A program made the translations under genes and the position numbers. Below the pieces are notes generated by a model, which worked only from the letters and a program-made list of their open reading frames with translations, made no database searches and had not been told where the DNA came from. Below, piece after piece: positions 11,441-43,190 of a DNA stretch of 64,000 bases. The stretch's first letter is position 1; every line of letters starts with the position of its first letter. This DNA comes from Convolutriloba macropyga (taxonomy: Eukaryota), in contig NC_134471.1 in NCBI RefSeq assembly GCF_964194025.1, positions 70,680,001-70,744,000 of the forward strand, written 5' to 3'.

Positions 11441-11444
11441 TTGT

Positions 11445-16830: not shown

Positions 16831-18122
16831 GTATATTAAAGTCTTTTCGGCATCTTCTAGATATTTTGCTCCATATTGAGTGGTCAATTAATATAAATTC
16901 TTTGCCGTTAAATTTTTGTGGTCGTTCAAATGGGTTAAATCAGTTGCTTTTCAACGTTGTCTCAAAAAACGAATATATAGCTCTTAATTGCTCTCAGACC
17001 AAGTTTCTAGCTATTATAGTAGTCCTTTTTAGGAGGATGCGATATTAGGCTAAAGCTCGAATCGGCGAAAAGCCTTTTTTTGTAGCCATTAGGCTAACAT
17101 GTTTGTTACATTTTGTGGAAGTTGGGTGATAACCAACTAAAAAAGCTTGGACGGTGCTTCAGACTGTACATGAAGCTTTAAAATTATCAATTGTTCCTTG
17201 CATAATAATAGCTTGCAAGAGCACAGTCGACAATTGCAGCATTTTTGTTCGAGTTCATCTCCTAATTACGCCTAATTTTTTTTGCACCCAGTAGCTTGTA
17301 AATTTTCCCTGATATTTCCGGGGGTTGTAGAAATAATGTATTAACTCATTTTTATGTAAAGGCAATTGTATGTGACACTTGCTTATATTATATTGTCAAT
17401 TGGATTGTGAAGTACCATAAACATATGTTGTAATTCGCCAAATTTCTACAAAATTTGTAGTTAAAATTGTCGCCTAATAGCTACCAAAATTAGTTCCGCA
17501 TGATCGAGCGTTGGCCTAATGTCCTACTTCACCATTTTTATGCGGTTGTTTTGCCTAATTGCTTTTTTGTTCGATGCTTTGACTTTTTGAGTAACTTTTT
17601 CACGCTTGACTTCTTTATCTTGGCTTGATCTAAACTGTTCTTTCCGAATTTAAGTTGCAAACTTACTCTGCGGCAGGTTACTATTGGGTCCACTGAGAAG
17701 TGCGCCAATTCGTTTTGTTTCAGTTAAAATCATAGCAGTGGTCTTTAATAAGCTCTAAAACCATCATTTGAAAAGCCTTAGCGATATTATACCCCCTCAC
17801 CGGCTATATTAAGGCTCAATTGACCCCCCGCGTGTCGTTTTGAGTGAAATTATGTTACTGTTTGCAGCCCCTCCGTTGTACTCGCCCACGCACGAACATA
17901 CATACACACACAAACGCTCGTATTAACACAGGTGCAAATATCCACGCGTAATAGGCAGGTCTCGAAAGAAACGCCATCTAATTAACAATGAAGAATGTAT
18001 GTCGATGAAGCACCAGTGTTTTGAGGTATTGTTTTGAGTTTAGAGACCTACAATGAGACCTAAAGTAAGACTTAAGTCTCGTTCTCAATTCATAAAATGA
18101 TTTTTTTGCTTATTTATTTCAG

Positions 18123-18276: not shown

Positions 18277-18820
18277 GTAAGTTAACTACATACAATTTTA
18301 TCCAATGACAATCTAGCAATTTAGTCTCTTTCAAATTCAATCAAATATATTCAGGGAGGAATTGTGTAATAATTTTTATCCATGACACTGTGCCTCTTTA
18401 ATAATTTTGACAGCAAGGTTGAGTGTAACAAAAAATTTGACGCGAATTTTGGGGAAAATGTTTTATTTGTTTCTATTACGAAAAGAACTAATTATCAGAG
18501 AAAGCTTATACTTTTTTATACGGTAGTGCAATTTTTACTAGTTTTTTGAACGTGTGAAACAGCGAGAAGAACCATGATAAATTCTTAAAAAATTTAAAAA
18601 ATTATTATAAATCTGCCCTAAGTAATAAACATTTTTGACGTCCAACCCTTGTTAACAATACAAAGATCTGTTGAAAACTATTTGATCAGCTTAGATCTGC
18701 TTAATTTGAAGCAATATTTTCTAGAAGATATATGTAGGGCATCTGTTTTGCATTCCATAATCTTTCAACAGCTCAGCAATAGAAGCAATCTATCGATTGG
18801 GATTTAAAATTACAGATTAA

Positions 18821-19164
18821 ATGGAATTCGACGGGGAAATTGAGGGTAGTGGGGTGACGGTGAAGGCATCCGACTACACCGATTCGGAGAGCATCATATC
18901 ACGCGATTTGTTCCACCATCTAAATTATTCCTACAATTGCCTGATTCCCATCAACGGTTATTTCATCAGGAAGGATCTGAGCCATAATTCGAAGGCGTGC
19001 AAGCTGAGTATCTTGGGAATCATGGATTTTGAAATTGACATGTGTTTGTACGACACCAGAGGGAGGAGATTCACTGTTAGATTGAGACCCTATGTCGTTG
19101 AGAGTGACTTCGATGATGTGGTGATTGGAAGAAATTTGATAAGCAACGTGTCAAGTAGAGGGGG
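18821..19164 (+). CDS. Coding exon 1 of a retropepsin-like/RNase H1 fusion gene: retroviral-type aspartic protease fold with a degenerate active site
   Basis: GEIEGSGVTVKAS-DYT-DSESIISRDLFHHL ... SILGIMDFEIDM ... FTVRLRPYVVESDFDDVVIGRNLIS follows the retropepsin pattern (g.i.g..v..l.D[ST]G....is..l...l ... dvilGr.fL). Strong donor GTGAGT at 19165, phase 2. Confidence 0.7.
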
Positions 19165-19416
19165 GTGAGTTTTATCTAAACTGCCCGATATCGGTCAAAT
19201 TAATGGTGATATCAAAGAAGTCGCTCGTACAGCAGTCAAATCTGACGTATCGGAACTACGTGCCATCGCAATTGTCTTCTGATGATAATTAATCCATAAT
19301 GTTTTGAAAGTTGGCATAAGATATGTGGAGAAATTAGGCTGATCAGTCAATTGCGCATGCGGAAAAAGTGCAGGCTATTGCTTAAATCTGAAATTGTTGC
19401 TAGCCCTAAACAGCAA

Positions 19417-19537
19417 TAAAATACTCACGTGCACCTTTTAAAATGCCGAAAGTCTGCAGTGCCAGAAGTTGCTACTTAGCCAGAATCTCAATTTCGTTGC
19501 CTTTCGTCATTTTAAAAAGTGCGCGTTTCGTGTTTTA
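19417..19537. repeat. Imperfect inverted repeat with about 37-bp arms (MITE-like)
   Basis: taaaatactcacgtgcaccttttaaaatgccgaaag pairs with ctttcgtcattttaaaaagtgcgcgtttcgtgtttta. Confidence 0.6.
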
Positions 19538-19540
19538 AAC

Positions 19541-19659
19541 ATGGTTAAGTGACTCTGCAGAAGTCACTTCGAAATTCTGACTTGATATCTCGAACCGCTT
19601 CGCGGTTCTCGATAAACGCCAGAAGTTCTCAGTGACTTCAAGCAGAGTCACTTAACCAT
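19541..19659. repeat. 119-bp near-complete palindrome (hairpin)
   Basis: Perfect 18-bp outer arms atggttaagtgactctgc ... gcagagtcacttaaccat; pairing continues inward to an apical gaaccgc-ttc-gcggttc. Confidence 0.75.
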
Positions 19660-22600
19660 TACTTCCATCTTTGAAAGTTTCTCAAATTGGCAATAAACTC
19701 GGGTTACTCGCTTGCATTAAACTGGTATCTGCCTTTTATGCTGTCAATTGTATTAGAGAGTTTTAGAAGTTAAATTTTCTGATCGTCACATTGCTACCAT
19801 TTGATTGATGGGCAGCTTATAACATTCAATTGTTTTAGTGCTGGGGCATGGTAAGTCGTACGATGGTAAAGTCCGATGTAATTATGCCCAGTGGCAATGA
19901 TTCGAAAATGCGGATCTCTTCCGTTTGTTTGTCCCCCCCCCCCTTCGCGTCTACGTCCCCCCCCCCCCCCCCACCAGTTCCCGCAGTTACCAGCGTATAA
20001 TAAAGTAAACCATTATGTACAAATATGGCATGTGCTATAGGTGGGGGGGGGGGTGCAAAACATCCCAAAAATGCTTTGGAAGTGCTAATTTTTCTGCATC
20101 TTTTCCGTTTGTAATACGTTACATATTGACGCATGATTTTTTGCTCTATGATTAATCATACTGTAACTGGAGACGCATACCGCACTTCGGCTCAATGACG
20201 GAAGAGACCCAATTTTTTTAGTATCAGCTTAAAAAGGAGCCAAATTTACATTTCTCTACATAAAAACATTAACCTTGATCGGATTGTCATTTGCCTTCAG
20301 CTCATACAGTTGCTTTCTTACAGAAATGAACAATGGCTTTCTAACAAACTGTGCTAGAGGCACCGTTAAATTCACTTTAATACAATTATGAGACATGAAT
20401 TCGCTACTAATTATGGCCTTCTTATTTTCAAATAAAAAATAGTTGTTGGGCGTAATTACAGTCGCGTTACTAGAAATCAGTTCTCTGAATGATAGGCTTT
20501 GATTTGATTTCTCACTTTTATGAGCACTATCTAATGCTTGTAATTAATCGTGGTCTAATCTTCAAATGTTTGACTTGTCCAAAGAAAATATTGGAACTGT
20601 TTCTTTGTCTGACGGTACAAATTGACCATCTAAAATCGAAACTTTAACAACTTTGTTATGGTATCACATAAATCGTTATTGATAGACATAGAACAAAAAC
20701 ACGCGTCAGTTTGTCCACACTGACTAATGGAAACAAAAAAGAGTGGGAGGTGCCAAGGAAACAGTTCCAAAGTGTGATCACTGTTGAGCTCAACTTGCAT
20801 TTACTTCTGTAGTTAATGGATATGGGGATGATGTGTTGTTTTTGCAGCTGCTGTTAACCATATATCTTCAGATCAAAAACATTTCTGCGAAAGAGTATTG
20901 TTCTATTTTGGCTTACGAAAAAAACTGTCTTTTCGCTGTGACAACTTTAATAGCTTTTTTGTTTTACGGAATTAGTATTTGTTCAGGTAGCGTTTTGGCC
21001 TAAAAGCGAAATCGAGGAAACGACATCGTGAACAAATTTTTCCTGGCCTAGAGGTTAATTTTTATTTATGCAGTGCTTTTAGTCGATGACTTATCAAATA
21101 GAAACGTGCTTACGGTTAAGCATTTTTAGCCGTTTTTTATCCTTAGGTCAATTTTTTTTTGGTATTAGTTAATAGTCGACGTCAGCCCCTCATCGGATTT
21201 TCTTACTTGCTCTCGAAGAGGAGTAATGGTGATCTATTTTTCAAATCCGTGAATTCTATATTAGGTGATGTTTTAGAGGAAGTCAAATGCCGCACAAGAA
21301 ACGAACTGTTTATGCCAATCTGCTGAACAACACTCAAAGGCAGATAGAGAATTTGGAGTTATTTTGTTGATCTTTTATTGTGAGATGGAGCGATCCAACT
21401 TGGTACGCTCAGCGAGCAAATAGCAATTTTTTATTACGTTCGGGTTTTGCGACGCAGTTTTTTTAGTTTTATTTCAACTTTATTGGAAAAAGGTTTGTGT
21501 CAATTATCTGAACTAGTTTTAATGCGTTTGGAAGCCCTTTTGACCATTGGACAAAAATATTAGACCTCTAGACTGTTTTGAGCTGTTTTTGCCAATTGGA
21601 CCCTTAGTTACCGTTTTTTTAAATTATTCTTCCATGTCTTATTGCTTCTAGGGAGTTTTTTAGTTGAACTTAAGTGCTCAAATGATTGAAGTGATCTTTC
21701 CATTTGATAGATTTTAGTTTTTTTTGTTTTTATTATAGAAAATGGGGGTAATTTTAATCATCTTTAGCCACCCGTTGCACGTGTTGTAAACGTGTTGCAC
21801 CCGCCTGTCATTCGCGAGCAATTCCTCGACATTAGTCGGTTTATGTTTTATTTCTGAATTTGAGCTTTGGGCTATAGTTTTTCTTGGTCACTATCTATGT
21901 CATATAGGTATCTGTTTTCATATAGATATCTGCTATTTGATTGTACAAAATTTTTTCCGGTTTTTAGTTGTCTTTTGCTGTTTAGTAATTATTTTACTAA
22001 CATTATATAGTTTACTGATTGAGCAAAAATTTTTTTACAGGTTTTCCGGAACAATTTTTAGGAGGTAGCGTTTTAAAATTTTTAAGGAACTTTGAGACAA
22101 TGTTTTTTTCTCTTTCCTTGGTTTTCTCTCTGTACTGTTCCTAATTTTTTTACATCACATGCAAGTCTTTCTTGAAGAAAGGCTATTTGTATTGCAAGTT
22201 GTTTTGCCATTAGTTATTTCAGAGTTGTAACGTGTTAAGAAATTTTATCAGATATTTTTACAGAAATCAATTTTGGGCATTCATCTTTTTTCATGTTTTT
22301 GTTTTAAATTGATAGAGTTATTCAGTAGGCTCATAATTATCTTTGATTTGGCGATTGGCAATGATTACTTCGGGTTTACTTCGCTTGGGTGCAGGAATCG
22401 TCGGCTATTTTTTAAAGATCTGTTCACACATTTTGATAATTTTTCTAGCCAATTTGAAGTGATTCTTTGGTCACGCCGAAGCAGGAAGTGTGGAGCAAAG
22501 AACCGGATGGTTTGGTGGTGTTGTTTTTTTTAAATTCTACAGTAGAGTGGGAATACGGTGTTTGAACAAAAATCGCTGTTGGTTTTTGTCAACATGCGGT

Positions 22601-25600
22601 AGTTAACTGTTTTTTCGATATTTTTGGTCAGATATTTCTGGCTGTTTCACCAATCAGTTCGTAGTGCCTTCTAATTTAGTCAATAACAATTCATCGAATT
22701 GCCGGTCAGTATTTGTCCTGCTACGGTTTTTACAGTCCAAATATTTGGATCGGATTGGTGCGCTTTCTTAAGATCTGTTCAGATTTTTCCGACTTTTTAA
22801 TGTGAATAAGTAAAATTTGAGTATTGATTCTAGTCCCGCTGTAGAAGTAAAGCACTGGAGAAGTGTAACTGCAATTTTGGTTTGAAGCTTAATTTAATTT
22901 AATCAATCGTTACAGTGGGGTGAATATTTGGTGTCTTGACTAATTTTTGGTTTTTGAGATAACATTTTTCACGTGCCTAAAATATGACTTCGGTTTACGA
23001 TGTTTTGAATATAGTGCAGAAATATATTAAAAACTTATTATAAACTTTCACACGTGGTTTAATTGCGTCTATTTGAACCTGCAGCTGCTGCTTTTCTGCC
23101 CGTGTTATAAAATATTAGTGAATTCTGTTTGCGTCTTTTTTACTCCTGTTGGCTTATCAGTCAGTCTTATTACTGGCAACCTCTTCGGTTTACCATTGAA
23201 AAAATTTTCTCAATTCTCATGTTGGAAGCAGTTAAATTATTTTTCTTTGTTTTGCATTTTTTTTGCTTAGAGGACACTAATTTTGAAAAAAATTCTGATA
23301 TTTGCGAAACGTTCTTTGTTTCATGGATTTATCCAAGGTTTTTGTAGGGTGAACTTAAGCTATAGTCAGTAGTTATATAAATTGTTGTTGTTTTTGGTGA
23401 TTTTTACGACAGTATTTTTGGAAAAATAAATTATTAAAACTAGCTGCCAGATTTTTTTTATTTGCGCATTTATAGACATATGCTTTGCTGACTGACAAAA
23501 TTTGATTTTTCTGGAAAAATGTTGATGTTCCGGTCATAGGTTAATCCAATTAATTAGGTTTTATTCCAGGGCTATGTTTCATATTAATTCGCTTTTACGT
23601 TTGATAACGTTTTTTGTTTTACATAAGTCACGATTTTGCTCAGACTTACCTCACTCACTTTTTCAATTGGATCAATTTTAGATGCTTTTATTCATTGAAT
23701 TACGCAATGTAGTGAATGTGGTGAAAATCAAGAGAGCAAAATCAAAGAAACGGGATAATCCAATAATCCCGGTCATTAAGTCATTAGGTTACCAAAGTTC
23801 AATGGAACGATTGCTAGCTGGCATCGGTACTAAGCAGAATAGCCTTCATTTTAGAAGCTGAATTAAGTATAATTTTCGAGCCTATCTGAAATTGTGCGCT
23901 CAATTAGAACAGTTTTTGACACTTTCGGTTAATTACGATATCCTCTTTTTTTGTGTTTCAATCCTTAATTGCGTAAAAGGAGGTTAACTGCGGCTATTTT
24001 TCGCGACATTGGCTGGCTATAGTGAAATTGATTTTGATCGAGGCAGCAGCTCTATTGAATTTTTATTAATGATTATTCATTAATCTTTGAATTGATTTGT
24101 TGTCAGTATATATGGCGAGGATGCTTTTGAGCTTTTTCTTTCTTTTTGAGCGTTTGAAGTGTTTTTTCTGAATGTTTGCTTGCAGTTCTGGTCGATCAAT
24201 TTGTTGCGTAATTTGTTTTGGTTCATTTAGTTGAGATATTTTATGATCATTAGATTTTTTGGCTATTCATAGCTAAATGTTTTTGACCGTAAGTGCATGA
24301 AAATTAAAGGCAAATTGGTTTAAATGACAGCTTCGTCTGTTATTCAACGTTACCTTTTATTTCAAAGAAGACTGCTTCATTTATAAGACAAATCGGCAAA
24401 ATCAAAATTTCAATTTTTTTGATTGACTTTTATTTACACTTAATTCATTTGCTTGTCGGTTATTAATTTTTCCAGGAGTCAGTTTTTTTTCTGACGAATG
24501 TAATGAATTTTCAAATAGGTTTCAACTGATTGAATAATTTTTGTTGCTCAGTTGTGTAAAAGCACTTTGATTGATTAAGATCTAATTTTATAACTGACTT
24601 TTTTTGCATTTTGTGATCCTAAAATTTAAACTTTTTGAGTTCCGGATTTTATAGTTTGTGATTATCGGCCCTAATTTTGCTAATGAACTACGTGTCTAGA
24701 TCTCTAAGGACAGTGTTGAGATCTGGATTCTCTCACCATGATTATTACCCGGGCGGTTTTCTTGAGTTTGCAAGTGTTTGTCCGTTTTAAAATTTTGACC
24801 ACTTCTGCTTCACCAGATAGTTTGTTTCTGTTTTTGTTACAAAAATTGAATAATTGCCTAAGATTTGATTTTGTTATTGTTTATCAATTTGTGTAATTTA
24901 TGAAATTTTCGATCATACATGACCTACCTCGCTAAATGACTTCTGCACTCGTTTTACTTATAATTTGAGAATTTAAACTCTAACTGAACTTCGATAAAGA
25001 TAGGATCGCGTGAAACAGATAGTTAACATGCTATATTGCTTGAAAGACATTTGTGTTTGTAATTAAGTTCGAAAATAATGATATAATTAAAAATCTGATT
25101 GTAATTTTTGATTGGCTTTTTGCCTTTGGTCTGGATAGTTTTTTTTTTAACTAGGAATCTTTTTCGTGGCTTATATTCTGGCAATCTGCCAGCTATGTTT
25201 CTTGAAGTTAGAGAGTTTCAATGCAAATTGGTCTTTTTGGCACCTGCTCTCAAAGTTTAGCATTTATGTCAGTCTGTTGGCATTCCCTTTTTCAGTTTTC
25301 GTCTAATCATTTTCCTTCCTAGTGGTTCCGTAAGATTAATTTAGCTACCCTGAAAGGTAATCACTTGAATGTCGTTTAAGAGAAAATAGTCAGCGACGTT
25401 TGATACTTATGTTTTTATTTACGACTAAAGGTGTTATAATTTGGTGTCCTTTAGATGTTCCAACTAACTGGGTTATCATCTCTAAACCATAAACACTATT
25501 TGTTTTCTAGCATTCATTAGCTTTCATATGACCTCTCACTCATGACGTAATCCTTTTTGAGGCGTTAGTGTATTTTCTTTCCCCATTTCATTATTTTTGG

Positions 25601-25612
25601 TAATATTTTCAG

Positions 25613-25761
25613 AGTCGAGGTTCTCGGACGCCGAGTGACGTTTGAAAGTGACCGGAGCGACGAGTTGATCAAATTGACTCTGTACCAGGACTCGTTCTCT
25701 TTCATCAGAAGTGGGTATCGCAATAAATACGTCGTCGTATATGTAGATGGATCGTGTTTTG
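25613..25761 (+). CDS. Coding exon 2 of the fusion gene: linker plus the first RNase H motif (VVVYVDGSCF)
   Basis: Acceptor taatattttcag (25612) and donor GTAAGT (25762). Phase 2 in and phase 1 out, matching both neighbouring exons. Translation VEVLGRRVTFESDRSDELIKLTLYQDSFSFIRSGYRNKYVVVYVDGSCFG. Absent from the ORF track. Confidence 0.85.
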
Positions 25762-27099
25762 GTAAGTTGGGATTATTATTAACTTGGTTTTAAGTTGCAA
25801 ATTTAAGCTTGAATGAAAACAAAGCGATATGGCTATTAATTTACTCTTAATTTAAAAAACTATATAGCCATTAAGGAATCAAGTTAATAAAAAGACTCAG
25901 CCACATAAACCTCAAGGCAGCTCAACTTTAAACCCAGCATTGGGACACTGGCGTCCCCGTGTCAGAGCAGTACGTACCTCGGGTGACTACGATTTATGTT
26001 CGAATAGATATACTTAGACAATTACCGGTGCATGCACTTCATCTCAATCATCTGAATGCCTTCATGCAATTTTTACACTGTTTTTTCCTTCCTATTTTGA
26101 CTGGATGCGTGCTATTTTGACGCACAGTCTGATTGCTGAATCATGCATTCACTGTGCGTGATCACGCTAGCTCGGTGTTTTGAGATCTAAAATTTTTATA
26201 GTTGAGCTGATTATCCGACTGCTCATTTTTTTTACCACAGGTGAATTTGTACCGCATTTTTCATCAGATGTTTAATATGTTCAAGCAGCCTTTTAGCTAA
26301 AATTGAAAATGACTAAAATTGACGTTTATTCGTTTATTGTTAAATTTTTTTGTTCTCTCCGGTTTTTGTCAACAATTTTTGGATTTGGACTTAAAGAAAT
26401 AACGCCCTCTACAGTTGATTTGAATGAGCAGATTTGGCTATTTGGAATTATGCATTTTTTAAGAAAAAGCTTTTTATCAGCCTCCAGATGTTGTATGTAG
26501 TTGACAGTTCAATTGTTTCTTAGGGTTTAGTTTTCAAACTTAGAAAAAGTTTGTTCCTAATGTCATTGTTTGCTCTCGCCTTTTGCTATTCTGGCAATAC
26601 TTTCTAACGGTTTTAGTGTGTGAATCCATTTTCAGCTTTTTTTGCAGCCAAAGTCTAATGATGCTAACGAATTTCTATTAAAAATGGAATTTTTAATTGT
26701 TTCCAATATACTGTTTTTTTTTGCTTTTTGTCCCGAGCTTCTGTTTATCTTATGATCAAAAGCAAAGTCATTATTGAGCAAAATTTATTTGACTTAATCA
26801 TTTAAATTGATTGAATGAAATTGGTTTTCAGAAGCCTAGTAAATGTTGTGCACTCAGCACAAACTCATCCCTCAGTTCCAGCAGGTCATCAATATGCTTC
26901 AAAGAAGCCTAGTCTAGTGATGCCTTTAAGCAGTTTAAAGGCACTTGGCCAGAAATCCTTAAACAAAATTGCGCTCTTTGGCAAAAAAATGGATTTAAAA
27001 AACCAATAAAATTTCAAAAAAATAAAGGTTCAGTAAATTTTTGGAAGTAGTTCAGCATTGCCATGAATGGAACATTAGACGCACAAAAATAAAATTTGC

Positions 27100-27832
27100 C
27101 AATTTGTTTCTATTTATTGCTTTTATACTTGTTGTAAAGTTGAGATTGTAGTTGAGCATGATGAGCAAATTCCTTACCCTTACACCAATAGATTTAGAAC
27201 TACAGCTAGTTGCGTCATTGGGTTGTTTCGATGGATCTACATGTACTTCTCGCTTTTCGTACCTTCTCAAGATCAACTTAAGTTATTATTGATTTAATTT
27301 CCTCCAATGGGCTCTCGTTCCTCAACTATGATTAATAACGTTAAGATTTCTTTCAATTTCAGTTCCTTTACAGCTTAGATCTGATTGCCTTCTCTCACAG
27401 TACGAATTGAAGCGTATTTTCTCAAACCGCATATACTTCTAACCAAATGACACAGTTTAGATTCCAGGGGCTCTTGGGCTGTTTTGCTTGCCGTTGCATA
27501 CAAAAGTTCAGCAATTTTTTGAGCAATAGTGAAGCGATTAAGTATTGAGAATCGGTAATTTTATAATGGTTATCAATAAAAAGGAACTTTGCATAAGGTT
27601 TTGGTTTAATAATTTCCTCATTTTTCACAGGGTGAACAGTAAAGCTTCCACTATTTCTTTTTACAATTTTTTGTCTTGGATTTTTAATTTTACCAACCGA
27701 CAACGTAGTTTACGCGTTCTTGATAATGTATACTACTGTTCATTTTGTTTTGCAGAACTCTTTCATCGGCAAATATTATAATCCAAAGATGATTGAAAAT
27801 TGGGTGATCTCAATTTTGCCAAAAATGAGAAT
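27100..27832 (-). mobile_element. 3' part of a decayed CR1/L2-type LINE (RT C-terminus and 3' end)
   Basis: The minus strand reads LIF.. then IFADERVL (YADD-equivalent), continuing the motif broken at about 33380. AATAAA on the minus strand near 27115. Confidence 0.6.
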
Positions 27833-28195
27833 TCTTGAACGTATATTTTTAATTGTTTGAATATGAAAAAAGTATGCTCACTTGCTGATTTACATCTGTG
27901 TTGTCCAGAAATCAATTCTAACTTCACGTGCAGTACTTACTGATGTTTTCCAGTACTATTCCTTTTTTACATGTAAATTGATAAAACTTGATGTTGACGT
28001 GTGATTGATACCTACGATAAAATGCTAGTAAACATCACATGTCACCGAAAGTTATTTTTATGTAATATAAAAGGGCGCTTATAACTGGGTATATAATTCG
28101 ATCAAGTTTTGGGCCTATTGCCACTGTTGTCAAACATCAATTCTAATTGAATTATTTGACTACACGATTTGTCTCTGTGTTCCCCTTAACCGATA
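27833..28195 (+). repeat. Copia 5' LTR
   Basis: Aligns with 33025-33378 and is followed by the PBS. Confidence 0.85.
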
Positions 28196-28217
28196 GGTTA
28201 TGGGGCCAGAGCTTTTA

Positions 28218-29020
28218 TGAGATAAGTAATCAGCCCGCTCTAAAAATAACACTATGCTGTTTTGTCTCTGCGCTGCTTTAGAGGATTGTTGACGTCAGTT
28301 GGAAAACGAACGAGAGGACAAGACTTGTAGTCAAGCAGTGGTCAAGAGTCAGAAGGAAAGCAAGTGGGACTGAAGCTCCAGTGTGCTCTAATTACGTTGG
28401 AGAACGAGTTTGTGTAGCTGATTGGAGGACTGCTGCTGGTAGAGAACGAGCTTGTGTATCTGATTGGAGACTCTGTTTGGATGGAGGGGGTTCTGTAGCT
28501 GATTAGATGACTCTGTTGGTGGAGAGAGAGCATCTGTAGCCGATTGTGGACTCTGTTTTTGGAGAGGGAGCATCTCTTGCTGCTTGTGGACTCTGTTTGT
28601 GTGGAGGAGATTGTGTATCCAATTTGAGGACTCTGTTTGTGGAGAGGGAGCATCTGTAGCCAATTGTTGGACTCTGTTTGTGGCGAAGCTTGTGTAGCAG
28701 ACTGGGTAACTCTGTTTGTGGACACGGAAGTTGTGTAACTGTGTGTGTGGCTTTGTTTGTGGAAGCTTGTGGGGGTGTTTTGTGTTCGAGTAGATGTTTG
28801 TGTAGCAGAACTTTCTAGGAGGACTTCTCCGGCTTACTTAGTATTGCTGAGAACAGCTCAGTTTAAACAACTGTTTTTTTAGCCTCATTTCTCATTGTGC
28901 TATCCTCACTGTGCTCATAGTGCTATCTTGTTGCATTCTCAATGTGCTAAAAGCATTTTTGGCTAATACAGCGACACACCGATTCGTCGCTTAATAACGA
29001 GGCCACCAACAGGCAACACA
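28218..29020. mobile_element. Putative solo LTR (803 bp) inserted just downstream of the Copia PBS
   Basis: Begins TG (28218), ends CA (29020) and is flanked by ttta on both sides (28214-28217; 29021-29024). Contains an internal tandem array. Confidence 0.5.
28390..28810. repeat. Degenerate tandem repeat with units of about 40 bp (gactctgtttgtggagaggg.gcatctgtagc..att)
   Basis: The ctctgttt motif recurs about every 40 bp. This explains the spurious ORFs 28342-28725 and 28388-28663. Confidence 0.85.
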
Positions 29021-29239
29021 TTTATCTAAACGCTAAAAAAACACTTAGGAGTTTTGCTCTAAGGCCGATTATTTTCAACTCATCCTATAGCAAAAGAGCA
29101 AAATCTTACGTAGAACAGTTTTAGCTTTCGAGTAAACCACAGTAACACAGGGTATATAGGCTAAACGAATAAAGTTTGAGTTATAACTAGGTAAAAAGGA
29201 AAAACTATAAAAAAGAATTTAAAACAGACAGGTAAAAAT

Positions 29240-32200
29240 TGAGTTCGAAGTCAGAGAGAATAATTTTTAGTGGGCGTGAGGATGATTTCCTATATTTTGC
29301 GGAACAGTTTGAAGCTCGTATGCACTCGTTGATATTAGGAAAAAGCTTTAACTGGCGATGCCACGCATGAAGATATGCCTACTGTTAAAAATGGCGCATC
29401 AGAGGAACAAAGAGCACACGCTGTAAAAAAAAAGGAAGAAAAGAACTAGAAGAGAGGAAAGGACTTTATGGTACGAACTTGTTCGAGCTTTAGATAAAAA
29501 GTCAGTTCTGTTTCTGAGACCACATAAAGGTGATGGTACTGAAGCTTGGGATATATTTTGCAAATGGTTGAAGAGTTTCGAGAGACCGCAATTATATAAA
29601 CTAATATCAGAATTAACTAGCCTTAAAAAGAGCTTGAATGAAAGCAGAGTAGACTACTTAACGAGAGCAGACGACATGAATTACAATTTGACACTGGGGA
29701 ACGAAGGCAAGAGCGAGAAAATGTTTATTTCAATAATTGTGAATGGACTACCTAAAGAATACGAGAGCTTCACCACACTCGTAAAATTGAGTAAAAAAGA
29801 GAAGAGTTTAGAAGAAATTCAGCGGGACCTTACCAATTTGGATAATGAGAATGTTCAAAAGAAAAGTGAGAGTATTTTCTACACTAAAGAACGAAAATGC
29901 TTCAAGTGTCAAAAGGTTGGACACATATCTAAGGATTGTCTACTTAAGAAGGCAAATACAGAACAAACAAGGGGGCAACCAATAAAGTGATTTAAATGTG
30001 GCGAGCAGGGTCACATCTCCAAGTTTTTAAGAAACAGAAACCAGAGAAAAAGTTTGTAAGCCAGAGCAGAAAGTTTAATCAAAACAATCAATCGGGGTCT
30101 CAGAGTTTAGTTGAAAAACCAAAAACGGAGTGTGAAGAATACTTCTCATTCTTTCAAACCGCAATCAATAATCCTTCGTGTGAACTAGTGTTAGACTCTG
30201 GAGCAACAAGTCATATGAATAAGGATGAAAGCTTTTTTTTTGGGATTGACAAAGAATATATAGGGACAATAACTAACGCAAATAATTGCAAAAGTTCAAT
30301 TGAAGGACGAGAGACAATTGAGATAAGAACAGAGGATTCAAAAGGGTGCCAGCGGAAATTAAGATTGTCAAATGCAATATTTGTTTCTGATAACTCGAAA
30401 AATTTGGTCTGTGTCGAAACTTAGAGCGGCTGATAATGAGGTTTTGTTCGGCAAGGACTTAGAGATCAGAACTAAAAACGGAACGATTTTCCCATTTGAG
30501 GAACATGACAATCTTTTCCTCTTGAAAACAGTGAATTCAACAGGTACAGAAAACTAACTTAGTCAGTGGAGACCGGCTAAGTTTATGGCACAAATGTCTA
30601 GTACATAATATTGAAGATCTTTTGAAATTAAAGGATCATGCCGTAGGACTCAGAATAAGTAAACTTGACGTAGGGAATTGTGAAATATGTCAATTGAAAA
30701 AGTCAATGAAGCCTCTCGTTCCGAAAGATTCCGGGACAAGAGCTAAAGATGTCTTAGAAATATTCCAAACTGATATTTTAGGGCCAAGTTCCTAAAGACA
30801 AGAGATGATGCAATAGAAAAGGTCCGGCGATTCTTTGCAGATATACGAAAACCAGGAACGTTGGTGTGCAATGGTGCTGGCAAATTCAGTTCGAACGAGA
30901 TGGCAATTATGTATAAAGCAAGGCGTATGACTAGGGTTTTCCGCACCTTATACATCAGAAGACAAAGGCGAAGTTGAACGTAATTGGCGAACAATAACAC
31001 AATGGCGAGATGTCTAATCGAGCAATCAGGACTTGATAAGACATACTGGTCTTGTGCAATAAACATGTCAAGTGACATTAAGAACTTTCGTTACCATTCG
31101 GGGATCAAAAGAATACCATTCGAAGCAATGTATGGGCAAAAGCCGAATTTTGAAGCACTGAAACTTTTTAGTTGTACTGCTTAGGTTCATATTGAGAAAT
31201 CATTCCGAAGGAAAGTAGATCGGACTTCACAAAAAGGTATGTTCTTGGGATCATCAAATAACAGCAAAACATATCTTATAGGACTAAGGGATGAAAAAGG
31301 CACATTTAAAGTTAGTCTAGAAACGTAACTTTAAACGAACAGAAAATGTTCAATAATAACTCGTTGAGTGGAGGTCAAAAACGGTTAGAATAGGAAGCAG
31401 ATCTGAATCCAGTAGCATTCTTAAATGACTTGATAAATTATAATGTGATACCTAAATAAACAGAAGAAGCAATAAAAGACAAAAATTGGTACGAAGCAAT
31501 GAAAATTCATATAATTCAGAGTATAATTCATTAGTTGAAAACAACGTGTGGGAACTTGAAGATAATCAGGAAATCAAACCTATTGATAGCCGTTGGCATT
31601 GTGCTCTGAAGTGGGGGCCTAGCGGAGAAATAGTGAGATATAAAACCAGATTGGTAGCTAAAGGTTTTAGCCAAGTACCAAGCAGAGTCTACAACGAGAC
31701 CTATTCACCGACAACGCGCCTCTCAATTTTCAGGATACTTTTTAGCTATGCACTCTGTAACGGTTCTGAGCTCAAATAAATGGACATTATAACTGCATAC
31801 TTAAATGCTGACATTGGTGAAGAGATCTTTTAGCAGTAACCTGAGGGTTTGAAAAGTTCAATGAGCATAGAAATCTATTAGTCTATAAGCTTAATAAAAG
31901 TTTATATTGAGTGAAACAATCTGGTAGGAATTGGTACCTTTCAATAAAAGTTTTCTTGGGGGTTTGGGTTTTGTTCAATCTGTTCAAGTTGAGTGCCTCT
32001 TTATAAAAAAGACAAAGGAGATATAGAGGGAATGATCTGTCCTTGGGTACATGATATGGTTATGTTAGGAACTCTACAAAAACTTTTGCGAAAACTTCAA
32101 AAGAAGGCAGTGAAAAGTTTAAAGTAAGTAGCTATGGTAACCTGAGTTGGTTCTCAAACATTAAAATAGAATGGATAGAAAACAAAATAATGCTAAGCCA

Positions 32201-33015
32201 AGAGGATTATATAGAATAACTAATAGAGTTTAAAATGAGTGACTGTAGGACACTGGAAAAATGTCTAGATGTTAGTTCAAAACTTTCAAAACTTGATTCA
32301 CCAAAAATAGGAAGCAAAGAATATCAAGATATGCAGTCTTGTGATTATAGGGGAAAAGTAGGATGTTTAAAATATTTAGCGTTGAGTACCAGACCAAATA
32401 TTGCACAAAAAGCTAATTTTTTGAGTTCGTTAGAAGAAATTCCGGGGAACAAGCATCGGAACGCCGCAAAATCTTGCCTACGCTACTTGAAGGGTACAAA
32501 GTCTGAAAAGCTTATATATACATAGGAAGTGTGATCAATTGGATCTAAAAGTTTTTTCGGATTCTGACTGGGCTGGTAACCTAGATAGCAGAAAAAGTAC
32601 GAACGGTTTGTTTCAAGCTTGACAATAGTTCAGGAGCAATTAGCTGGGCTAGTAAGTTACAATAGTGCGTATCAACCTCCACAGCTGAAGCTGAACTGAA
32701 TGCAGTAGAAGAGGCAACAAAGAGGCGGCACACTTAGCAAACCTTTTGAAGGAAAGGAACATAGAAGTTGAAGAACCTTTACAAGTGTTTGTAGATAATC
32801 AAGCATGTAGTGCTCTTAGTAAGATTTCCATGAACCATGGCAAGACTAAGCGCTTTGCGTTGAAAGTGAACTTCATTCGGAACTTAGTCGAGAACAGACT
32901 ATTAGAGCTGAACTACTTGCCTACCGATCGCCTGCCGGCAGATACCCTAACAAAGGCTTTGGGGAGAACAAAAATATCACTTCCGTGATTTTCTCCTAGG
33001 TTCAAACACTTATGA
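29240..33015 (+). pseudogene. Copia gag-pol, disrupted
   Basis: Fragmented ORFs 29568-29990, 29996-30424, 30984-31184, 31486-31779, 32235-32525 and 32746-32988 carry Copia motifs in Copia order. Confidence 0.9.
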
Positions 33016-33024
33016 TAGGAGGGC

Positions 33025-33378
33025 TATTAAATGTATAATATTAATTGTTTGAATATGAAAAAGTATACTCACTTGCTGATTTACATCTTTGTTGAGAAAA
33101 CAGTGCTTATTTCACGTGCAGTTTATATTGATGCTTTCGAGTACTATTCCGTTTTTATATGTGAATTGATAACACTTGGTGTTGACGTTTGATTGATGCC
33201 TTTGATAAAATGCTAGTTAACATCACATGTCACCGAAAGTCATTTGTATGTTATATAAAAGGGCGGTAATAACTGGGTATATAATGCGATCAAGATTTGT
33301 GCCTATTGCCACTTTTGTCACACATCAATTCTAATTGAATTATTTGACTACACGATTTGTGTTTGCGTTCCCTTAAAA
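33025..33378 (+). repeat. Copia 3' LTR
   Basis: Follows the polypurine tract and aligns with the 5' LTR with many substitutions, indicating an old insertion. Confidence 0.85.
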
Positions 33379-33379
33379 A

Positions 33380-36300
33380 GTAGAGGCCCCAGAACTGAAC
33401 CATGCGGCACTCCAACTCCAATTGTTTTCCTTGATGATAGTTGAATACGCATTCTAAATCTGTGACTTTTGTTCGATAGATAAGAAGACATGAGTTATTG
33501 TATCGGCCCTCGGAAGCCCAGATCAAGAAGTAAGTTAACCAGGTGTTTATGGTTCACTGTACCAAAAGCTTTTCGTTAACCCGAAGAATGTAGCTCTTTT
33601 TTTGATGAAGTCTTTATTTCACATGTCTTTTGTTTTTAATACGTTAGCTGGACTAGAGTGCTACCTGTGAACATTTTTCTTATGAAGCCTTACTGTTTTT
33701 GAAACAGAACATTGTTTTTGTTGTGAAAACTGCTGTATTTGAACGAATAAGATTTTTTCAATTGTGTTGCTGATTGTAGGTAGGATAAAAATATGCCTAA
33801 ATTTGTTCGGATCAACAAAGTGTTCCAATTTATGGAGGGGAATAACTATTGCCTCTTTCAAACATTCTGGGAATACGCGCTTCTTGTTGTAGTCATCAAA
33901 TGGTACTGTTTCTACAGGAACAAGCACAAATTTAGTCTTTGACAGTGAAAATGTTCACACAGTGATGATCTTGTGAAAACATAATACCAATTTGTTTTTT
34001 TTTGTTCTATTCGATCTCATTATTTGTTTTTGACTTTGAAAGTAGGCGTCATTTTAGATGCAACTGCAAAAAAATTATCGAACAATCCGACACAGCTTAT
34101 TGCCTTATGGAAGCTTCCATTTTTTTTGTGTTGGAATTAAATTTTCTTTGATAAAAATTGCGTAACTTTTTCCATTTAGTTTTTGCAACTTGTTTTTTTC
34201 TATTGTACTTTAGTTTACTTCATGCAGTTTTGTCTCGTAAGCAAGTTTGATAGAGGTTATTTGTCAGTGAAGCTAAATTTCTGAACTTCGTTATCCACCC
34301 AAACTTGTTAGACGTTAACTTGTTTGGATACTTTTGTTGGAATAAACTGATTCTGGTAGCGTCCACGAGCCCATGAAACTTCATAAAATCTGCTTTTAAA
34401 TAATCATCGCCGTAGCGCTTTTTAAGAACTCAGCCAAAAACCTAACTTAGCTTGAAATCCATGTTTGGCAAAATTGAGGAATAATTAATTTTTTTCCAGA
34501 GTCTCGCAGTAAAGGGTTGATCTGTATCTAATTGTAGTTTGCAAGGAATTAAATCCGTGTAATGTTGAATCAGTAGTCTTGATGGTAGAGGTCTCAATTT
34601 CATATGTTAATACGCTACATCAATACTGCTTTTATGGGTGGTTTCCCTTGTGCTGCAAATTTTATGACAGTTACGGAAGTCAAACTCGTAGGGAACGTTT
34701 TTTTTAAGCTATTAATTGTCACCATGGTTTCCTTATGTCGATATTCAGATCACCACATAGGAAATGGATATCGCCAGGTTTTTTCAACATCTTCGAGATA
34801 GTCTTGAAATACTTCTGTAAAATTTTTTTAGGATGCAATTGGTTTCATTTACGTGTCTGTGATTAAAACACTCTTTTTGTGACTTTTAGTTATACCGAAA
34901 AAAAATCTGACAGAAATTATTTTGTATGTAGACACTTCATGCCTTCTAATTTTTTTTGAAAATTGGTTGCAACTCCTTTCGTTTCTGTTACATGCAATTA
35001 GTTTCTGATCGCCATGTTTTTCAAAACAGTGTGTGTCGCAATGTCATTGAGCCATGTTTCAGTGAAACATATTTAAATAGGTTTAATGTCTAATGCTGAT
35101 TGATACTCGTGCAACCAGTTCATCAATTTTTTTTACGTATTGATCTAATATTTTGATGATTTATTGTTTCATTTGCGCTCATAATTATGTTTTTGGACAT
35201 CAAGACAATGATTCTGTTGTTTTACCTGTTCTCTTGGTTTTGCGAATTAAACATGGTCAAAAACTCCTCATTTTGCCTATTAGAATCCCAACCAAAACAA
35301 AACTGTTTATTGACAGAACAGACATAACAAACTAACTTTTTTCTTTCCCGAAATTTATTTGCGAGTCTTTCAAGGAAAGGGGTTTCATGAGGATTTTCTA
35401 TCAAAGTTAGCAGTTCTATATTCAATAATTGGTTTTGGATTCTGAAGGTATTAGTGCGCTTAGTCTCATTGGAATCTTGTTACTATTTCTCTGTTAAATG
35501 TTTCAGCGGTTGATGAGATTGGTGCGAAGTTTACTGGATTAGTGCCTAATGCTTTCGTTTTTGGTTGGTACTGTTGATGGAGGTGCCGACGCTACATTCA
35601 TGAGTTCATCCGGCTGTGTCTTGTTTTTGTTCCTCACAGAAATGCTTTTGTTCCGCTAGTAATCTGAGTGGGAAAAGAGACGTATTGAGAAATTTTAACC
35701 CTTAATTGTTTCTGATTCATGTATTGCGTTTCGAGTAGCTTTTGACGCCCAGAAGATTTTTTAACGGAATTTTGCCTTGCTGTGTTAGTTTGGCCTATTT
35801 TTGCTTCAACTGTTTTAATTGGAGATACAGATTGGTATCATTTGTCGTTTTTTTCTGTCTGTTAAAATTTGAAGTTTTTTTCGTCAACATTTTTGTGGAA
35901 AAACTTTGATCTTTGTGCTTTTTGGCTAATAGATCGAATGTGTTGTATCTGAATGATATCTGGGATGCGTTTGTTTTCCTGTTTCTGTTTGAAACAATTT
36001 AAGTTTCAGCCTTTTTTTCGTACAATTTGTCTTGAAATTTATTTTTCGTTTGGCTTGTTGATTTTCATGTTAGTAACTTTAGCTTTGATTGACTTTTGCT
36101 TCTCACTTACGGTATTCAAACGCATAGTTTTTTTCTCGATATCTCAAGCAACGGTTTGAAGTGCATTTGCACGATTAAATTTTCATCATCCGTGGCTTAG
36201 TTGACTTAATAAAATGACCTCCACACCTTGTAGCTTATTTTTGTTTAAAATTAGTTTGACCGAAGAAAATCATTTGTATAATAAACGTCACTGTTAGAAA
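33380..36300 (-). mobile_element. 5' part of a decayed CR1/L2-type LINE (ORF1 remnant, APE endonuclease, RT N-terminal half)
   Basis: Minus strand: ISETWLND-like APE motif (about 35050-35075), VFPECLKEAIVIPLHK...ILPTISNTIEKIL (33661-33927) and GVPHGSVLGPLLF (about 33375-33415). The 5' boundary is approximate. Confidence 0.75.
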
Positions 36301-36674
36301 GACTGTGGAATTAAATCAAAGAAAAAAATAGCATTTTAGCTGTCGATGAATTCAACTCGGTTCCTTATCTATTTCTAGCTAATTGCTTCGGCAGCAATTC
36401 TATTTGGCAGCTATATTCGGTAGTCTGCTGGCTATGTCTATACAACATTAACGAAGAAAGAAGCAATCTGGTTAGGCTGAAACAATCTGGTCTTGTTGTT
36501 TTGGAGAATATGGTCTAATCTAAATCTTTTTTCGTGAAATGTTGGTCGAACTAGTTGCCTAGTTTATTTTTATTTTTCAAATCCCAGAGCCTTACGTTGA
36601 TTCGAATTTCCTTGTGCCAAATATGTATTTGAGAACTTCAGATCATTTGGCATCGTATTTGGCTGTCCGTTTAG

Positions 36675-37108
36675 GTAACGGAAGGTCCAATCCAGCGCCA
36701 GGAATTGGACTTTACTGGGGGAATCATCACCCGTTAAACATCATCCGATCTGGAGATCTTCGGTCCACGAATAATGGAGCAGAACTGGAAGCCGTTATTC
36801 TGGCTCTGAAGACTGCTCTAGCGAACAACGAAATCCAAAATTTGATAATCAGAACGGATTCCCTTTTGACCGTAAATAGCGCTACCAAATGGATTCGGAA
36901 ATGGAGGCGAAACGATTGGCGAAGTTACAATGGCTCCCCTGTCAAAAACCAGAGTCTTTTGAAGACAATAGATGATCTGCTTTATGACGCACGATGCTGC
37001 AATATTGATGTTCAATTCGTTCACATCCCAGGCCATAAAGGAGAGTATGGCAACGAAATGGCGAATAAATTTGCACAGTGGGGCGCTAAAAAATTTCGAC
37101 ACTGTTAA
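36675..37108 (+). CDS. Coding exon 3 of the fusion gene: eukaryotic RNase H1-type catalytic domain
   Basis: Acceptor ccgtttag (36674). NGRSNPAPGIGLYWGNHHPLNI, TNNGAELEA, IRTDS, KWIRKWRRNDWRSYNGSPVKN and HIPGHKGEYGNEMANKFA match RNase H1 motifs. Confidence 0.9.
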
Positions 37109-38156
37109 CAGAGCAGATTACGAGCAACTGCCTGGTGTTATAAGTATGGCTCCAGATACATAAAAAACTGACTTTATTTTGAGCCGAGTACAGATCAATT
37201 GAAATGTGCTCAAGATTAGTGCAGTGTTTGTAATTATTTGAGTAAAGTATTTTATTACATTTTTAGTAATATATTTTTAGTAATATATTTATAAATATAA
37301 AACATATATTTTAGTAAAATAATTTATTACTTTATAAATTTTAAAAATGCTGTCTATTTGCGCTGAAAAATTTTGCGTATCATTCATAACGATTAGAAAC
37401 TTTTTGTCCTTTGTTTTTAACAACTATTTGAAATGAGTACTGACCAATTAGCCGACTAAAAGTTTCTTGTATGGACTTTCTTCATACATTCAATAAATTC
37501 TTATTATTTTGTAACTATAATAGTTGGGGTTCAGGGGTATTTTCGGGCTGACAAATTTTTGATTTAATTTTTAGGTGAGCAATATGCGGCTTTTAGAAAA
37601 CGGTGGCCATTTAGAAAATAGGCGACAGATATTACAAAGAGTTGATAGATTTTTTTAAGACATATACATGAGATGTATATCAAAGATGGTTGTTCAAATT
37701 CGAAAAATGAACATAAAAAGAGTTGAAATGGAGCTATTTGGAAAGGCCGCTAACCTTAAAATGATTATAATTATGCTCAATTTCATCTTTTATCAGTTTT
37801 TGAAACTTCGTTTTTATCAAATTTATGGTTCAGACTTTGAATGATCGCTAGAAGTCTTAATGAAAACTTTTTTTCGTCTGCATAGGGCCTAGAACGTTTT
37901 CCATCTTAACTTGGAGAGCATGTGATGTCCTTCAATTCAATTTTACAGCGCAGCTTTTGGATTTTTTTCGGCAAGTAAGCTTCCAAGTGCCTCTGAGATG
38001 CCAAAAATGCTGCTTTGATTGTACTTTTAAATGAATACTTTGAGATTACCGGCTTTTTTGTATGCATTTTTTGCTCATGATCTTTGTCAGCTTCTTTCAG
38101 AGAGAACCGTTAATTGCTATAAGTATTAAGCTATTGAAATTATTTTTTTGAAATTG

Positions 38157-43148: not shown

Positions 43149-43179
43149 ATCGCTTCTCGGCCTTTTGGCTAAGATCATG
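43149..43179 (+). ncRNA. U2: U2 snRNA 5' fragment (3'-truncated pseudogene)
   Basis: atcgcttctcggccttttggctaagatca equals the conserved first 29 nt of metazoan U2. The branch-point recognition sequence and the rest of U2 are absent. Confidence 0.9.
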
Positions 43180-43190
43180 CAAATTATCCT

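What the first reader, a model, noticed from the sequence alone, without database searches (positions are those of the whole stretch)
18821..37108. Hidden spliced host gene fusing a retropepsin-like pseudo-protease to a cellular-type RNase H1 domain
Seen in the sequence: three exons (18821-19164, 25613-25761, 36675-37108) with canonical GT-AG sites and matching phases join into an uninterrupted 308-aa ORF across 18 kb, although the surrounding retroelements are heavily decayed. Established: eukaryotic RNase H1 normally has an N-terminal hybrid-binding domain, and retropepsins (retroviral PR, DDI1, ASPRV1) are obligate dimers with a D[ST]G motif. Here the hybrid-binding domain is absent. In its place is a retropepsin-pattern domain whose catalytic triplet reads DYT but which keeps DVVIGRNL and C-terminal strands like those of the dimer interface. 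The RNase H part is of the cellular type (GIGLYWG..HPLN, basic protrusion, HIPGH loop), not the reduced LTR-element type, and there is no RT between the two domains. Inference: this is a domesticated or exon-shuffled gene. The dead protease fold could dimerise the nuclease, or could bind retroelement protease/Gag-Pol and deliver RNase H into particles, which would make it a candidate retrotransposon restriction factor. I know of no described protein with this architecture.
Basis: partly seen in the sequence, partly recalled or inferred. Interest (0 to 1): 0.92.

Follow-up and report, generated by a model that had tools for sequence, protein, structure and literature searches.

The report
Acoel RNase H1-like gene, orphan N-terminus
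The three exons form a real gene, already in RefSeq, of the acoel worm Convolutriloba macropyga: a cellular-type RNase H1 nuclease whose usual N-terminal hybrid-binding domain is replaced by a conserved domain with no detectable relatives, and no test here supports calling that domain a dead retroviral-type protease.

Summary
Exons 18821-19164, 25613-25761 and 36675-37108 have GT-AG borders and join into a 308-aa ORF. The gene is not hidden: the product is identical to RefSeq XP_075243587.1, "ribonuclease H1-like [Convolutriloba macropyga]", on chromosome OZ077302.1.

Residues 153-302 are a cellular-type RNase H. Pfam gives E 6.5e-31 and the best solved relative is human RNase H1 at E 1.9e-27. 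Three of the four catalytic carboxylates and the histidine are kept; the fourth position is Asn.

Exon 1 is real coding sequence. Against a second divergent copy it has 23 substitutions, no indels and dN/dS of about 0.13-0.15, and the ATG and donor are conserved.

No hybrid-binding domain was found.

The retropepsin reading has no support. There are no Pfam, NCBIfam or PDB hits and no hits among 1.84 billion representative proteins. Comparisons with the window's own retroelement pieces were not significant, and the structure models were too poor to use.

Best reading: a host RNase H1-like gene with a lineage-restricted N-terminal domain of unknown fold. Interest is moderate to low.

The parts
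18810..18815 (+). Acceptor-like TTACAG five bases before the start codon, suggesting that an untranslated exon is spliced on upstream (inference)
   Evidence: Read. The equivalent TTTCAG is present at the same place in the second copy, L003. An in-frame TAA lies directly before the ATG in the window.
18821..19164 (+). Coding exon 1: ATG plus residues 1-114 and two bases of codon 115; the orphan N-terminal domain
   Evidence: Identical to the start of XP_075243587.1. dN/dS is 0.13-0.15 against the second copy, with no indels and with ATG and GTGAGT conserved. No family, PDB or database relatives.
19165..25612 (+). Intron 1 (6448 nt), GT...AG
   Evidence: No other conserved coding block in the part covered by the second copy, which reaches 23506. 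No Pfam hit on its longest open stretches.
25613..25761 (+). Coding exon 2: linker plus the first strand of the RNase H domain, with catalytic Asp160 (25746-25748)
25762..36674 (+). Intron 2 (10913 nt), inflated by a decayed Copia-like LTR element at 27901-33377 in the same orientation
   Evidence: The LTR-like direct repeats are 87% alike. Copia gag, beta-barrel, pre-integrase and RVT_2 pieces are.
36675..37108 (+). Coding exon 3: the rest of the RNase H domain and the stop codon. Glu201 is at 36782-36784, Asp226 at 36857-36859 and Asn295 (in place of the fourth Asp) at 37064-37066
   Evidence: The second copy has 6.5 synonymous against 3.5 non-synonymous changes.
25725..37087 (+). RNase H domain (Pfam PF00075, residues 153-302), split by intron 2 into 25725-25761 and 36675-37087
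   Evidence: E 6.5e-31, 107.8 bits, cut-off 25.8; human RNase H1 2qk9, E 1.9e-27.

Best explanation
This is a single-copy, intron-containing host gene of the acoel Convolutriloba macropyga, annotated by NCBI as 'ribonuclease H1-like'. Its C-terminal half is a cellular-type RNase H1 catalytic domain, which most likely still binds RNA:DNA hybrids and probably cuts their RNA strand. It keeps Asp160, Glu201, Asp226, His285 and the basic protrusion, but the fourth metal-site carboxylate is Asn295, so activity may be reduced. The usual N-terminal hybrid-binding domain is missing. In its place is a lineage-restricted, apparently beta-rich domain of about 115-150 residues that is under purifying selection. 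Its fold and partners are unknown. By inference it supplies the targeting or substrate-holding role that the hybrid-binding domain normally plays. Shown here: the gene model, the domain identity, the selection on exons 1 and 3, and the absence of a detectable HBD. Inferred: the exon 1-exon 2 splice in vivo, catalytic competence, and the role of the N-terminal domain.
For: The ORF joins cleanly with GT-AG borders. It is identical to XP_075243587.1 over the same genomic span. The RNase_H Pfam match is E 6.5e-31 and human RNase H1 is the best solved relative, aligned through the basic-protrusion region. Exon 1 has dN/dS 0.13-0.15 with no indel, while its flanks carry many indels and are 77-87% identical. 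Exon 3 has dN/dS of about 0.15. Exon 1 is the only conserved coding block in the upstream stretch that could be compared, 11-23.5 kb. It is single-copy in the window, with no flanking LTR-like repeats. It has no relatives in 1.84 billion representative proteins; the 15-billion-protein collection behind that library includes gene calls from a whole assembly of this animal. The neighbouring gene is an ordinary sirtuin-7-like host gene.
Against: No transcript evidence could be examined. Exon 1 on its own also ends in a stop codon if the donor is not used, giving a 115-aa ORF. The HBD search used two bacterial proteins and a narrow bacterial profile, plus Pfam on the model and on only the longest upstream open stretches, so a short or split HBD exon could have been missed. 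The last 2.1 kb of intron 1 has no second copy to compare. Asn295 may mean the nuclease is weakened. Whether a separate canonical RNase H1 exists in this genome could not be checked.
Confidence: 0.8

Rival explanations
1. One reading: the N-terminal domain is a degenerate retropepsin fold, a domesticated retroelement protease that has lost its catalytic triplet. It would dimerise the nuclease or dock onto retroelement proteins.
For: Seen directly in the sequence: a D-x-T triplet at residues 18-20 followed by a Ser/Ile-rich stretch, an I-G-R-N motif at 102-105 about 85 residues later, and mostly beta-strand predictions. The best weak alignment, though not significant, is to the beta-barrel (protease-region) piece of the window's own Copia element, in the expected relative position (P 0.074, 40 columns, 35% identity).
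Against: No retropepsin family (or any other) matches residues 1-152 or either allele of exon 1 in Pfam at E up to 10. NCBIfam gives nothing related. PDB gives nothing by sequence or by profile. The exhaustive phmmer search found 0 hits. hhalign probability is 0.8% or lower against the Copia and Gypsy pieces. Foldseek shows no retropepsin in the top 50 and nothing at E <= 0.001, on a low-confidence model. The defining D-[ST]-G is absent. The motif spacing of 85 residues is longer than I recall for retropepsins (own knowledge).
Confidence: 0.13
2. Exon 1 belongs to a separate small gene or transcript (the 115-aa ORF ending at the TGA inside the donor). The RNase H exons would then use another, unrecognised first exon, possibly one that encodes a hybrid-binding domain.
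For: The unspliced ORF is closed at 19166-19168. No RNA evidence was available. The 6.4-kb intron is long beside the roughly 450-nt introns of the neighbouring sirtuin gene. The 2.1 kb just upstream of exon 2 could not be compared between copies.
Against: Exon 1 ends at a strong donor that is conserved in both copies and is in the phase exon 2 requires. No other conserved coding block and no HBD signal were found upstream. NCBI's pipeline arrived at the same join.
Confidence: 0.1
3. The whole thing is a decayed transposon-derived ORF or a pseudogene that joins up by chance.
For: The gene sits among decayed Copia-, Gypsy- and non-LTR-type elements. RNase H domains also occur in retroelements.
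Against: Both exon 1 and exon 3 are under purifying selection. The RNase H domain matches human RNase H1 at 99 bits against 38-46 bits for retroviral RNase H chains. No RT, LTR or extra copies are present. An intron splits the RNase H domain itself.
Confidence: 0.03

Closest known systems
Eukaryotic RNase H1 (human RNASEH1; PDB 2qk9, 6vrd)
   Same: The catalytic domain is of the same type: about 37% identical over 139 residues at E 1.9e-27, with no gap through the basic-protrusion segment. The G-I-G-x-Y-W-G and H-P-L-N motifs, the catalytic D, E, D and the His of the P-G-H loop are kept.
   Different: There is no N-terminal hybrid-binding domain (PF01693) and instead an unrelated orphan domain. 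The fourth catalytic Asp is Asn295. The N-terminus is acidic, unlike a mitochondrial presequence (read; inference).
Bacterial RNase HI with or without an HBD (E. coli RNase HI, PDB 1rnh and others; Chloroflexota HBD-RNase HI, P0001-P0121)
   Same: Same fold family and catalytic core.
   Different: The matches are much weaker (about 50 bits) than to human RNase H1. 118 of 120 bacterial relatives have Asp where this protein has Asn295.
   Same: Only a size of about 110-135 residues, a beta-rich prediction and two short motif resemblances (D-x-T and I-G-R-N).
   Different: No statistical similarity in any search, and the catalytic D-[ST]-G is absent. None of these proteins came back as a hit when the finding's own protein was the query.
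HBD-less RNase H1 paralogues of other animals (I recall such genes, rnh-1.1 to rnh-1.3, in Caenorhabditis elegans; own knowledge, not checked here)
   Same: A cellular RNase H1 catalytic domain without the hybrid-binding domain.
   Different: The protein here carries a conserved extra N-terminal domain rather than simply lacking one. The relationship was not tested.

Membership tests
Type 1 cellular RNase H (RNase H1 / HI) | RNase H catalytic domain matching PF00075 above the curated cut-off | tested here: met
   107.8 bits against a cut-off of 25.8, residues 153-302, profile 2-140 of 141; human RNase H1 at E 1.9e-27.
Type 1 cellular RNase H (RNase H1 / HI) | First three catalytic carboxylates (D, E, D) and the conserved His | tested here: met
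   D160, E201, D226 and H285 sit in columns where 117-119 of 120 relatives have the same residue.
Type 1 cellular RNase H (RNase H1 / HI) | Fourth catalytic carboxylate (the position of human D274, as aligned) | tested here: not met
   Asn295, where 118 of 120 relatives and human RNase H1 have Asp. It is the same in the second copy.
Type 1 cellular RNase H (RNase H1 / HI) | Basic protrusion (handle), which distinguishes the cellular type from reduced LTR-element RNase H | tested here: met
   ungapped alignment to human RNase H1 through the W-x-x-x-W-K/R-rich segment.
Canonical eukaryotic RNase H1 architecture | N-terminal hybrid-binding domain (PF01693) | tested here: not met
   no PF01693 on the 308-aa product; no HBD-coding stretch anywhere in the window by tblastn or by a local profile (bacterial comparators, so limited sensitivity); none on the longest upstream open stretches.
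Canonical eukaryotic RNase H1 architecture | Mitochondrial targeting presequence on the longest isoform | not tested
   No predictor was available. The N-terminus is acidic, which argues against one (inference).
Retropepsin (clan AA aspartic protease fold) | Significant match to a retropepsin-family profile or to a solved retropepsin | tested here: not met
   Pfam, E up to 10, both alleles and the full protein; NCBIfam; PDB by sequence and by profile; 0 of 1.84e9 representatives; hhalign probability 0.8% or lower.
Retropepsin (clan AA aspartic protease fold) | Catalytic D-[ST]-G triplet | tested here: not met
   the candidate triplet reads D-Y-T in the window. It is invariant in the second allele.
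Retropepsin (clan AA aspartic protease fold) | Retropepsin three-dimensional fold and dimer interface | tested here: inconclusive
   AlphaFold2 without an alignment gave pLDDT 36 and 34, and even the known RNase H domain failed. Foldseek found nothing at E <= 0.001. No orthologues were available to build an alignment.
LTR-retroelement Pol ORF | RT domain, flanking LTRs, multiple dispersed copies | tested here: not met
   no RT; no LTR-like repeats around exon 1; no other copy in the window or among the representative proteins.

The most novel reading that the evidence does not exclude
The conserved N-terminal domain is a domesticated, catalytically dead retropepsin (or another retroelement-derived beta-barrel) fused directly to a cellular RNase H1 domain. 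That architecture is not described anywhere, and it could mean acoels have re-targeted RNase H1 towards retroelement replication intermediates.
Probability: 0.12. Interest if true: 0.7.

Novelty: new variant of a known kind. Interest (0 to 1): 0.3.

Why it matters
RNase H1 removes RNA:DNA hybrids, and its hybrid-binding domain is the usual way the enzyme finds and holds its substrate. An animal RNase H1-like protein that has swapped that domain for a selected, lineage-specific one, and carries Asn at one metal-binding position, is a modest but genuine variation. It would be useful for asking how RNase H1 is targeted and how new domains arise in Xenacoelomorpha.

Tried and rejected
1. Word-indexed protein searches. 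The whole model found only two bacterial HBD-RNase HI proteins. Exon 3 alone found only the second copy of the same gene.

2. Exhaustive phmmer of the exon-1 ORF gave 0 hits, not even itself. The probable reason is that its cluster is represented by the 161-aa exon-3 ORF. Relatives hidden inside that cluster are therefore covered only.

3. A JGI metagenome scan for exon-1 relatives found none.

4. AlphaFold2 on exon 1 and on the full protein without an alignment gave pLDDT 36 and 34.

5. A Pfam scan of all 142 upstream open stretches of 30 aa or more was not run, to avoid sending a very long list of references. Instead I used a local HBD profile over all six frames, a comparative exon scan against the second copy and Pfam on nine long upstream open stretches.

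6. The window's Gypsy element gave no Pfam-recognisable protease piece, so it was a poor comparator. The Copia beta-barrel piece was used.

7. A literature search for the effect of Asn at the fourth carboxylate found nothing usable. My recollection that E. coli RNase HI tolerates Asn at Asp134 is unverified.

8. Exon 2 of the second copy lies in neither L001 nor L003, so it could not be compared.

Full report
**1. Checking the observation**

The three stretches 18821-19164, 25613-25761 and 36675-37108 total 344 + 149 + 434 = 927 nt. Joined as they stand they read as 308 codons plus TAA with no internal stop.

The borders are canonical: donor GTGAGT after 19164, acceptor TTTTCAG before 25613, donor GTAAGT after 25761 and acceptor TTTAG before 36675.

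Exon 2 cannot stand alone. It has no ATG, and its frame is closed by a stop 45 nt upstream of the acceptor (read). It therefore needs an upstream exon that ends in phase 2, which exon 1 does.

The exon 2/3 junction lies inside the RNase H domain and restores a continuous match to known RNase H1.

**2. Source of the window, and the gene is not hidden**

An exact look-up placed the exon-1 ORF and the exon-3 ORF in one protein cluster together with a 308-aa NCBI protein. That protein is XP_075243587.1, "ribonuclease H1-like [Convolutriloba macropyga]".

Its gene occupies exactly the same 18,288-bp span on chromosome OZ077302.1 of assembly GCA_964194025.3.

The organism is an acoel worm. Its genome note reports a 1.18-Gb assembly, 40% repeats, 3.65% heterozygosity and one RNA-seq run, ERR13669978 (PMC13650328).

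The upstream neighbour is an ordinary sirtuin-7-like gene with introns of about 450 nt.

XP_ records are computed models, and I could not see transcript data. The RefSeq model is therefore agreement from an independent pipeline, not proof of the splice.

**3. The nuclease half**

- **Family match.** Residues 153-302 match Pfam RNase_H at E 6.5e-31 and the NCBIfam ribonuclease HI models.
- **Closest solved relatives.** Human RNase H1 comes first (2qk9, 99 bits, E 1.9e-27, about 37% identity over 139 residues). E. coli RNase HI follows at about 50 bits, and retroviral RNase H chains at 38-46 bits or lower.
- **Basic protrusion.** The alignment to the human enzyme runs ungapped through that segment.
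- **Catalytic positions.** In an alignment with 120 bacterial relatives, Asp160, Glu201, Asp226 and His285 sit in near-invariant columns. Position 295 is Asn where 118 of 120 relatives, and the human enzyme, have Asp. The second copy has the same Asn.
- **Effect on activity.** From memory, and unverified here, E. coli RNase HI tolerates Asn at the equivalent Asp134, so I treat the domain as probably active but possibly weakened.

**4. Is exon 1 a real coding exon?**

Yes.

- **Composition.** GC is 0.45 against 0.29 just upstream, GC3 is 0.59 and 69% of first codon positions are purines. No other open stretch between the sirtuin gene and exon 2 shows this pattern.
- **A second copy.** A second, divergent copy of the locus exists in an independent assembly of the same animal (ENA ERZ25071359). 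Exon 1 is on one contig (L003, protein P0125) and exon 3 on another (L001, protein P0003).
- **Flanks against exon.** The flanking DNA of the two copies is 77-87% identical and full of indels. Exon 1 has 23 substitutions in 345 nt, no indel and an open frame in both copies.
- **Selection.** There are 14.5 synonymous against 8.5 non-synonymous changes, so dN/dS is 0.13-0.15. The binomial P for the synonymous excess is about 3e-5.
- **Conserved signals.** The ATG, the GTGAGT donor and an acceptor-like CAG five bases before the ATG are all conserved.
- **Exon 3.** The divergent part shows the same pattern, 6.5 synonymous against 3.5 non-synonymous changes.
- **Nothing else upstream.** I scanned every indel-free stretch that is stop-free in both copies between 11 and 23.5 kb. 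Exon 1 was the only long block with low dN/dS.

I cannot say whether the second copy is the alternate haplotype or a recent paralogue. Either way the comparison shows purifying selection.

**5. Transposon or host gene?**

- Exon 1 occurs once in the window and has no LTR-like repeats around it.
- There is no RT in the product.
- Exon 1 has no relative at E <= 0.001 among 1.84 billion representative proteins. The 15-billion-protein collection from which those representatives are drawn includes gene calls from a whole assembly of this animal. It also has no relative in JGI metagenomes.
- The 90% cluster holds only the five pieces of this gene and its second copy.
A decayed Copia-like element with 87%-identical LTR-like repeats lies inside intron 2, in the same orientation. 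A Gypsy-like element and a non-LTR ORF lie downstream of the gene.

**6. Is the hybrid-binding domain really absent?**

- The 308-aa product has no PF01693 match.
- tblastn with two HBD-carrying RNase HI proteins found no HBD-coding stretch anywhere in the window.
- A local profile built from 119 bacterial HBDs, run over all six frames with filters off, also found none.
- Pfam on nine long upstream open stretches found nothing.

These comparators are bacterial, and short or split exons could escape. Absence is well supported for the annotated isoform and only moderately supported for the locus as a whole.

**7. Is the N-terminal domain a retropepsin?**

Nothing I could run says so.

| Test | Result |
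|---|---|
| Pfam, full protein and both exon-1 alleles, E up to 10 | no family on residues 1-152 |
| NCBIfam | nothing relevant |
| PHROGs | nothing relevant |
| PDB by sequence and by two-allele profile | no protease; only chance hits to ribosomal protein uL4, E 0.36 or worse |
| hhalign vs the window's Copia beta-barrel piece | P 0.074, probability 0.8%, 40 columns |
| hhalign vs the two Gypsy pieces where a protease would lie | nothing |
| AlphaFold2 without an alignment | pLDDT 36 (exon 1) and 34 (full protein) |
| Foldseek against PDB, on the exon-1 model | nothing at E <= 0.001; no retropepsin in the top 50 |

The known RNase H domain also failed to fold in AlphaFold2. The poor models therefore say nothing either way about the N-terminal domain.

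- a D-Y-T triplet followed by a Ser/Ile-rich stretch;
- an I-G-R-N motif 85 residues later;
- a beta-rich prediction.

The defining D-[ST]-G is absent in both alleles. I rate the retropepsin reading at about 0.13: not excluded, not supported.

**8. Best explanation**

This is a host RNase H1-like gene. A lineage-restricted N-terminal domain, selected and of unknown fold, stands where the hybrid-binding domain normally is, and the catalytic domain keeps all but one of its catalytic residues.

- **Shown:** the gene model and its identity to RefSeq, the domain identity, selection on both ends of the protein, single-copy status, and no detectable HBD.
- **Inferred:** that exon 1 is spliced to exon 2 in vivo, that the nuclease is active, and that the new domain takes over targeting or substrate holding.

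The acidic N-terminus does not look like a mitochondrial presequence (inference).

**9. Novelty and verdict**

The gene is already annotated, and the nuclease domain is ordinary. The replaced N-terminal domain and Asn295 make it a new variant of a known kind. The restriction-factor idea has no evidence behind it.

Interest is 0.3. If a fold-level test later shows a dead retropepsin fused directly to a cellular RNase H1, interest would rise to about 0.7; I put that at roughly 0.12.

**10. Slip declared**

Twice in my reasoning I began recalling letters of known proteins from memory: the human RNase H1 hybrid-binding domain, and a copia protease stretch. None of those letters entered any call, script, note or conclusion.

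The 308-aa sequence typed into searches was copied from the output.

Noticed in passing
window 44830-45019 (+), next to ORF 43173-44684 (+): A complete U2 spliceosomal snRNA gene (Rfam RF00004, 107 bits, model 1-192 of 192) starts 146 nt after the end of a roughly 500-aa ORF. That ORF has only a weak zinc-binding-in-RT match and is listed as a called gene of 462 aa in the NCBI-sourced locus. It could be a U2-associated non-LTR element or a coincidence.
   Followed up: no
window 27901-33377 (+), inside intron 2: A decayed Copia-like LTR element in the same orientation as the gene, with LTR-like direct repeats of 289 nt that are 87% alike. Pieces matching gag, zinc knuckle, Pol beta-barrel, pre-integrase and RVT_2 are recognisable but lie in three different frames (at least three interruptions). 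No integrase core was detected.
   Followed up: partly
window about 55746-62260 (+): A Gypsy-like element: gag, RT, RNase H-like, integrase zinc-binding domain, integrase core and C-terminal domain. Its pol pieces are spread over three frames (at least three frame changes). No Pfam-recognisable protease was found. There is a weak Macro-domain match below cut-off (E 5.8e-4) ahead of the RT. A 477-nt two-copy repeat and a 37-nt satellite lie just upstream at 54670-55631.
   Followed up: no
window 38154-41295: A tandem array of about four units of roughly 778 bp, 96-98% alike, present in both copies of the locus. It is beyond the period limit of the tandem-repeat tool.
   Followed up: no
window 11001-11874 versus L003 1-4700: A repeat unit of about 780 bp, present about once in the window, is expanded to six or more tandem copies in the second copy of the locus. 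This is a copy-number difference between the two copies.
   Followed up: no
window 11-23.5 kb and 35.9-37 kb versus L003 and L001: The two copies of this locus differ by 13-23% in non-coding DNA, with many indels. Downstream of the middle of exon 3 they are 99.5% identical over 10.6 kb, with a sharp switch inside exon 3. This is far above the 3.65% genome-wide heterozygosity reported in PMC13650328. Possible causes are old alleles, a recombination or gene-conversion boundary, or a paralogue.
   Followed up: partly
window 17780-18050 (+): A GC-richer island (up to 0.49) about 0.8-1 kb upstream of the start codon. It has a TATA-like TATATTAAG and a possible GT donor, and is 82% conserved in the second copy. 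It is a candidate promoter and untranslated first exon of the RNase H1-like gene.
   Followed up: no
window 8255-10354 (+): A sirtuin-7-like gene (XP_075244603/4, 388 aa) in three coding exons with introns of about 450 nt. It marks the upstream limit of the RNase H1-like locus.
   Followed up: partly
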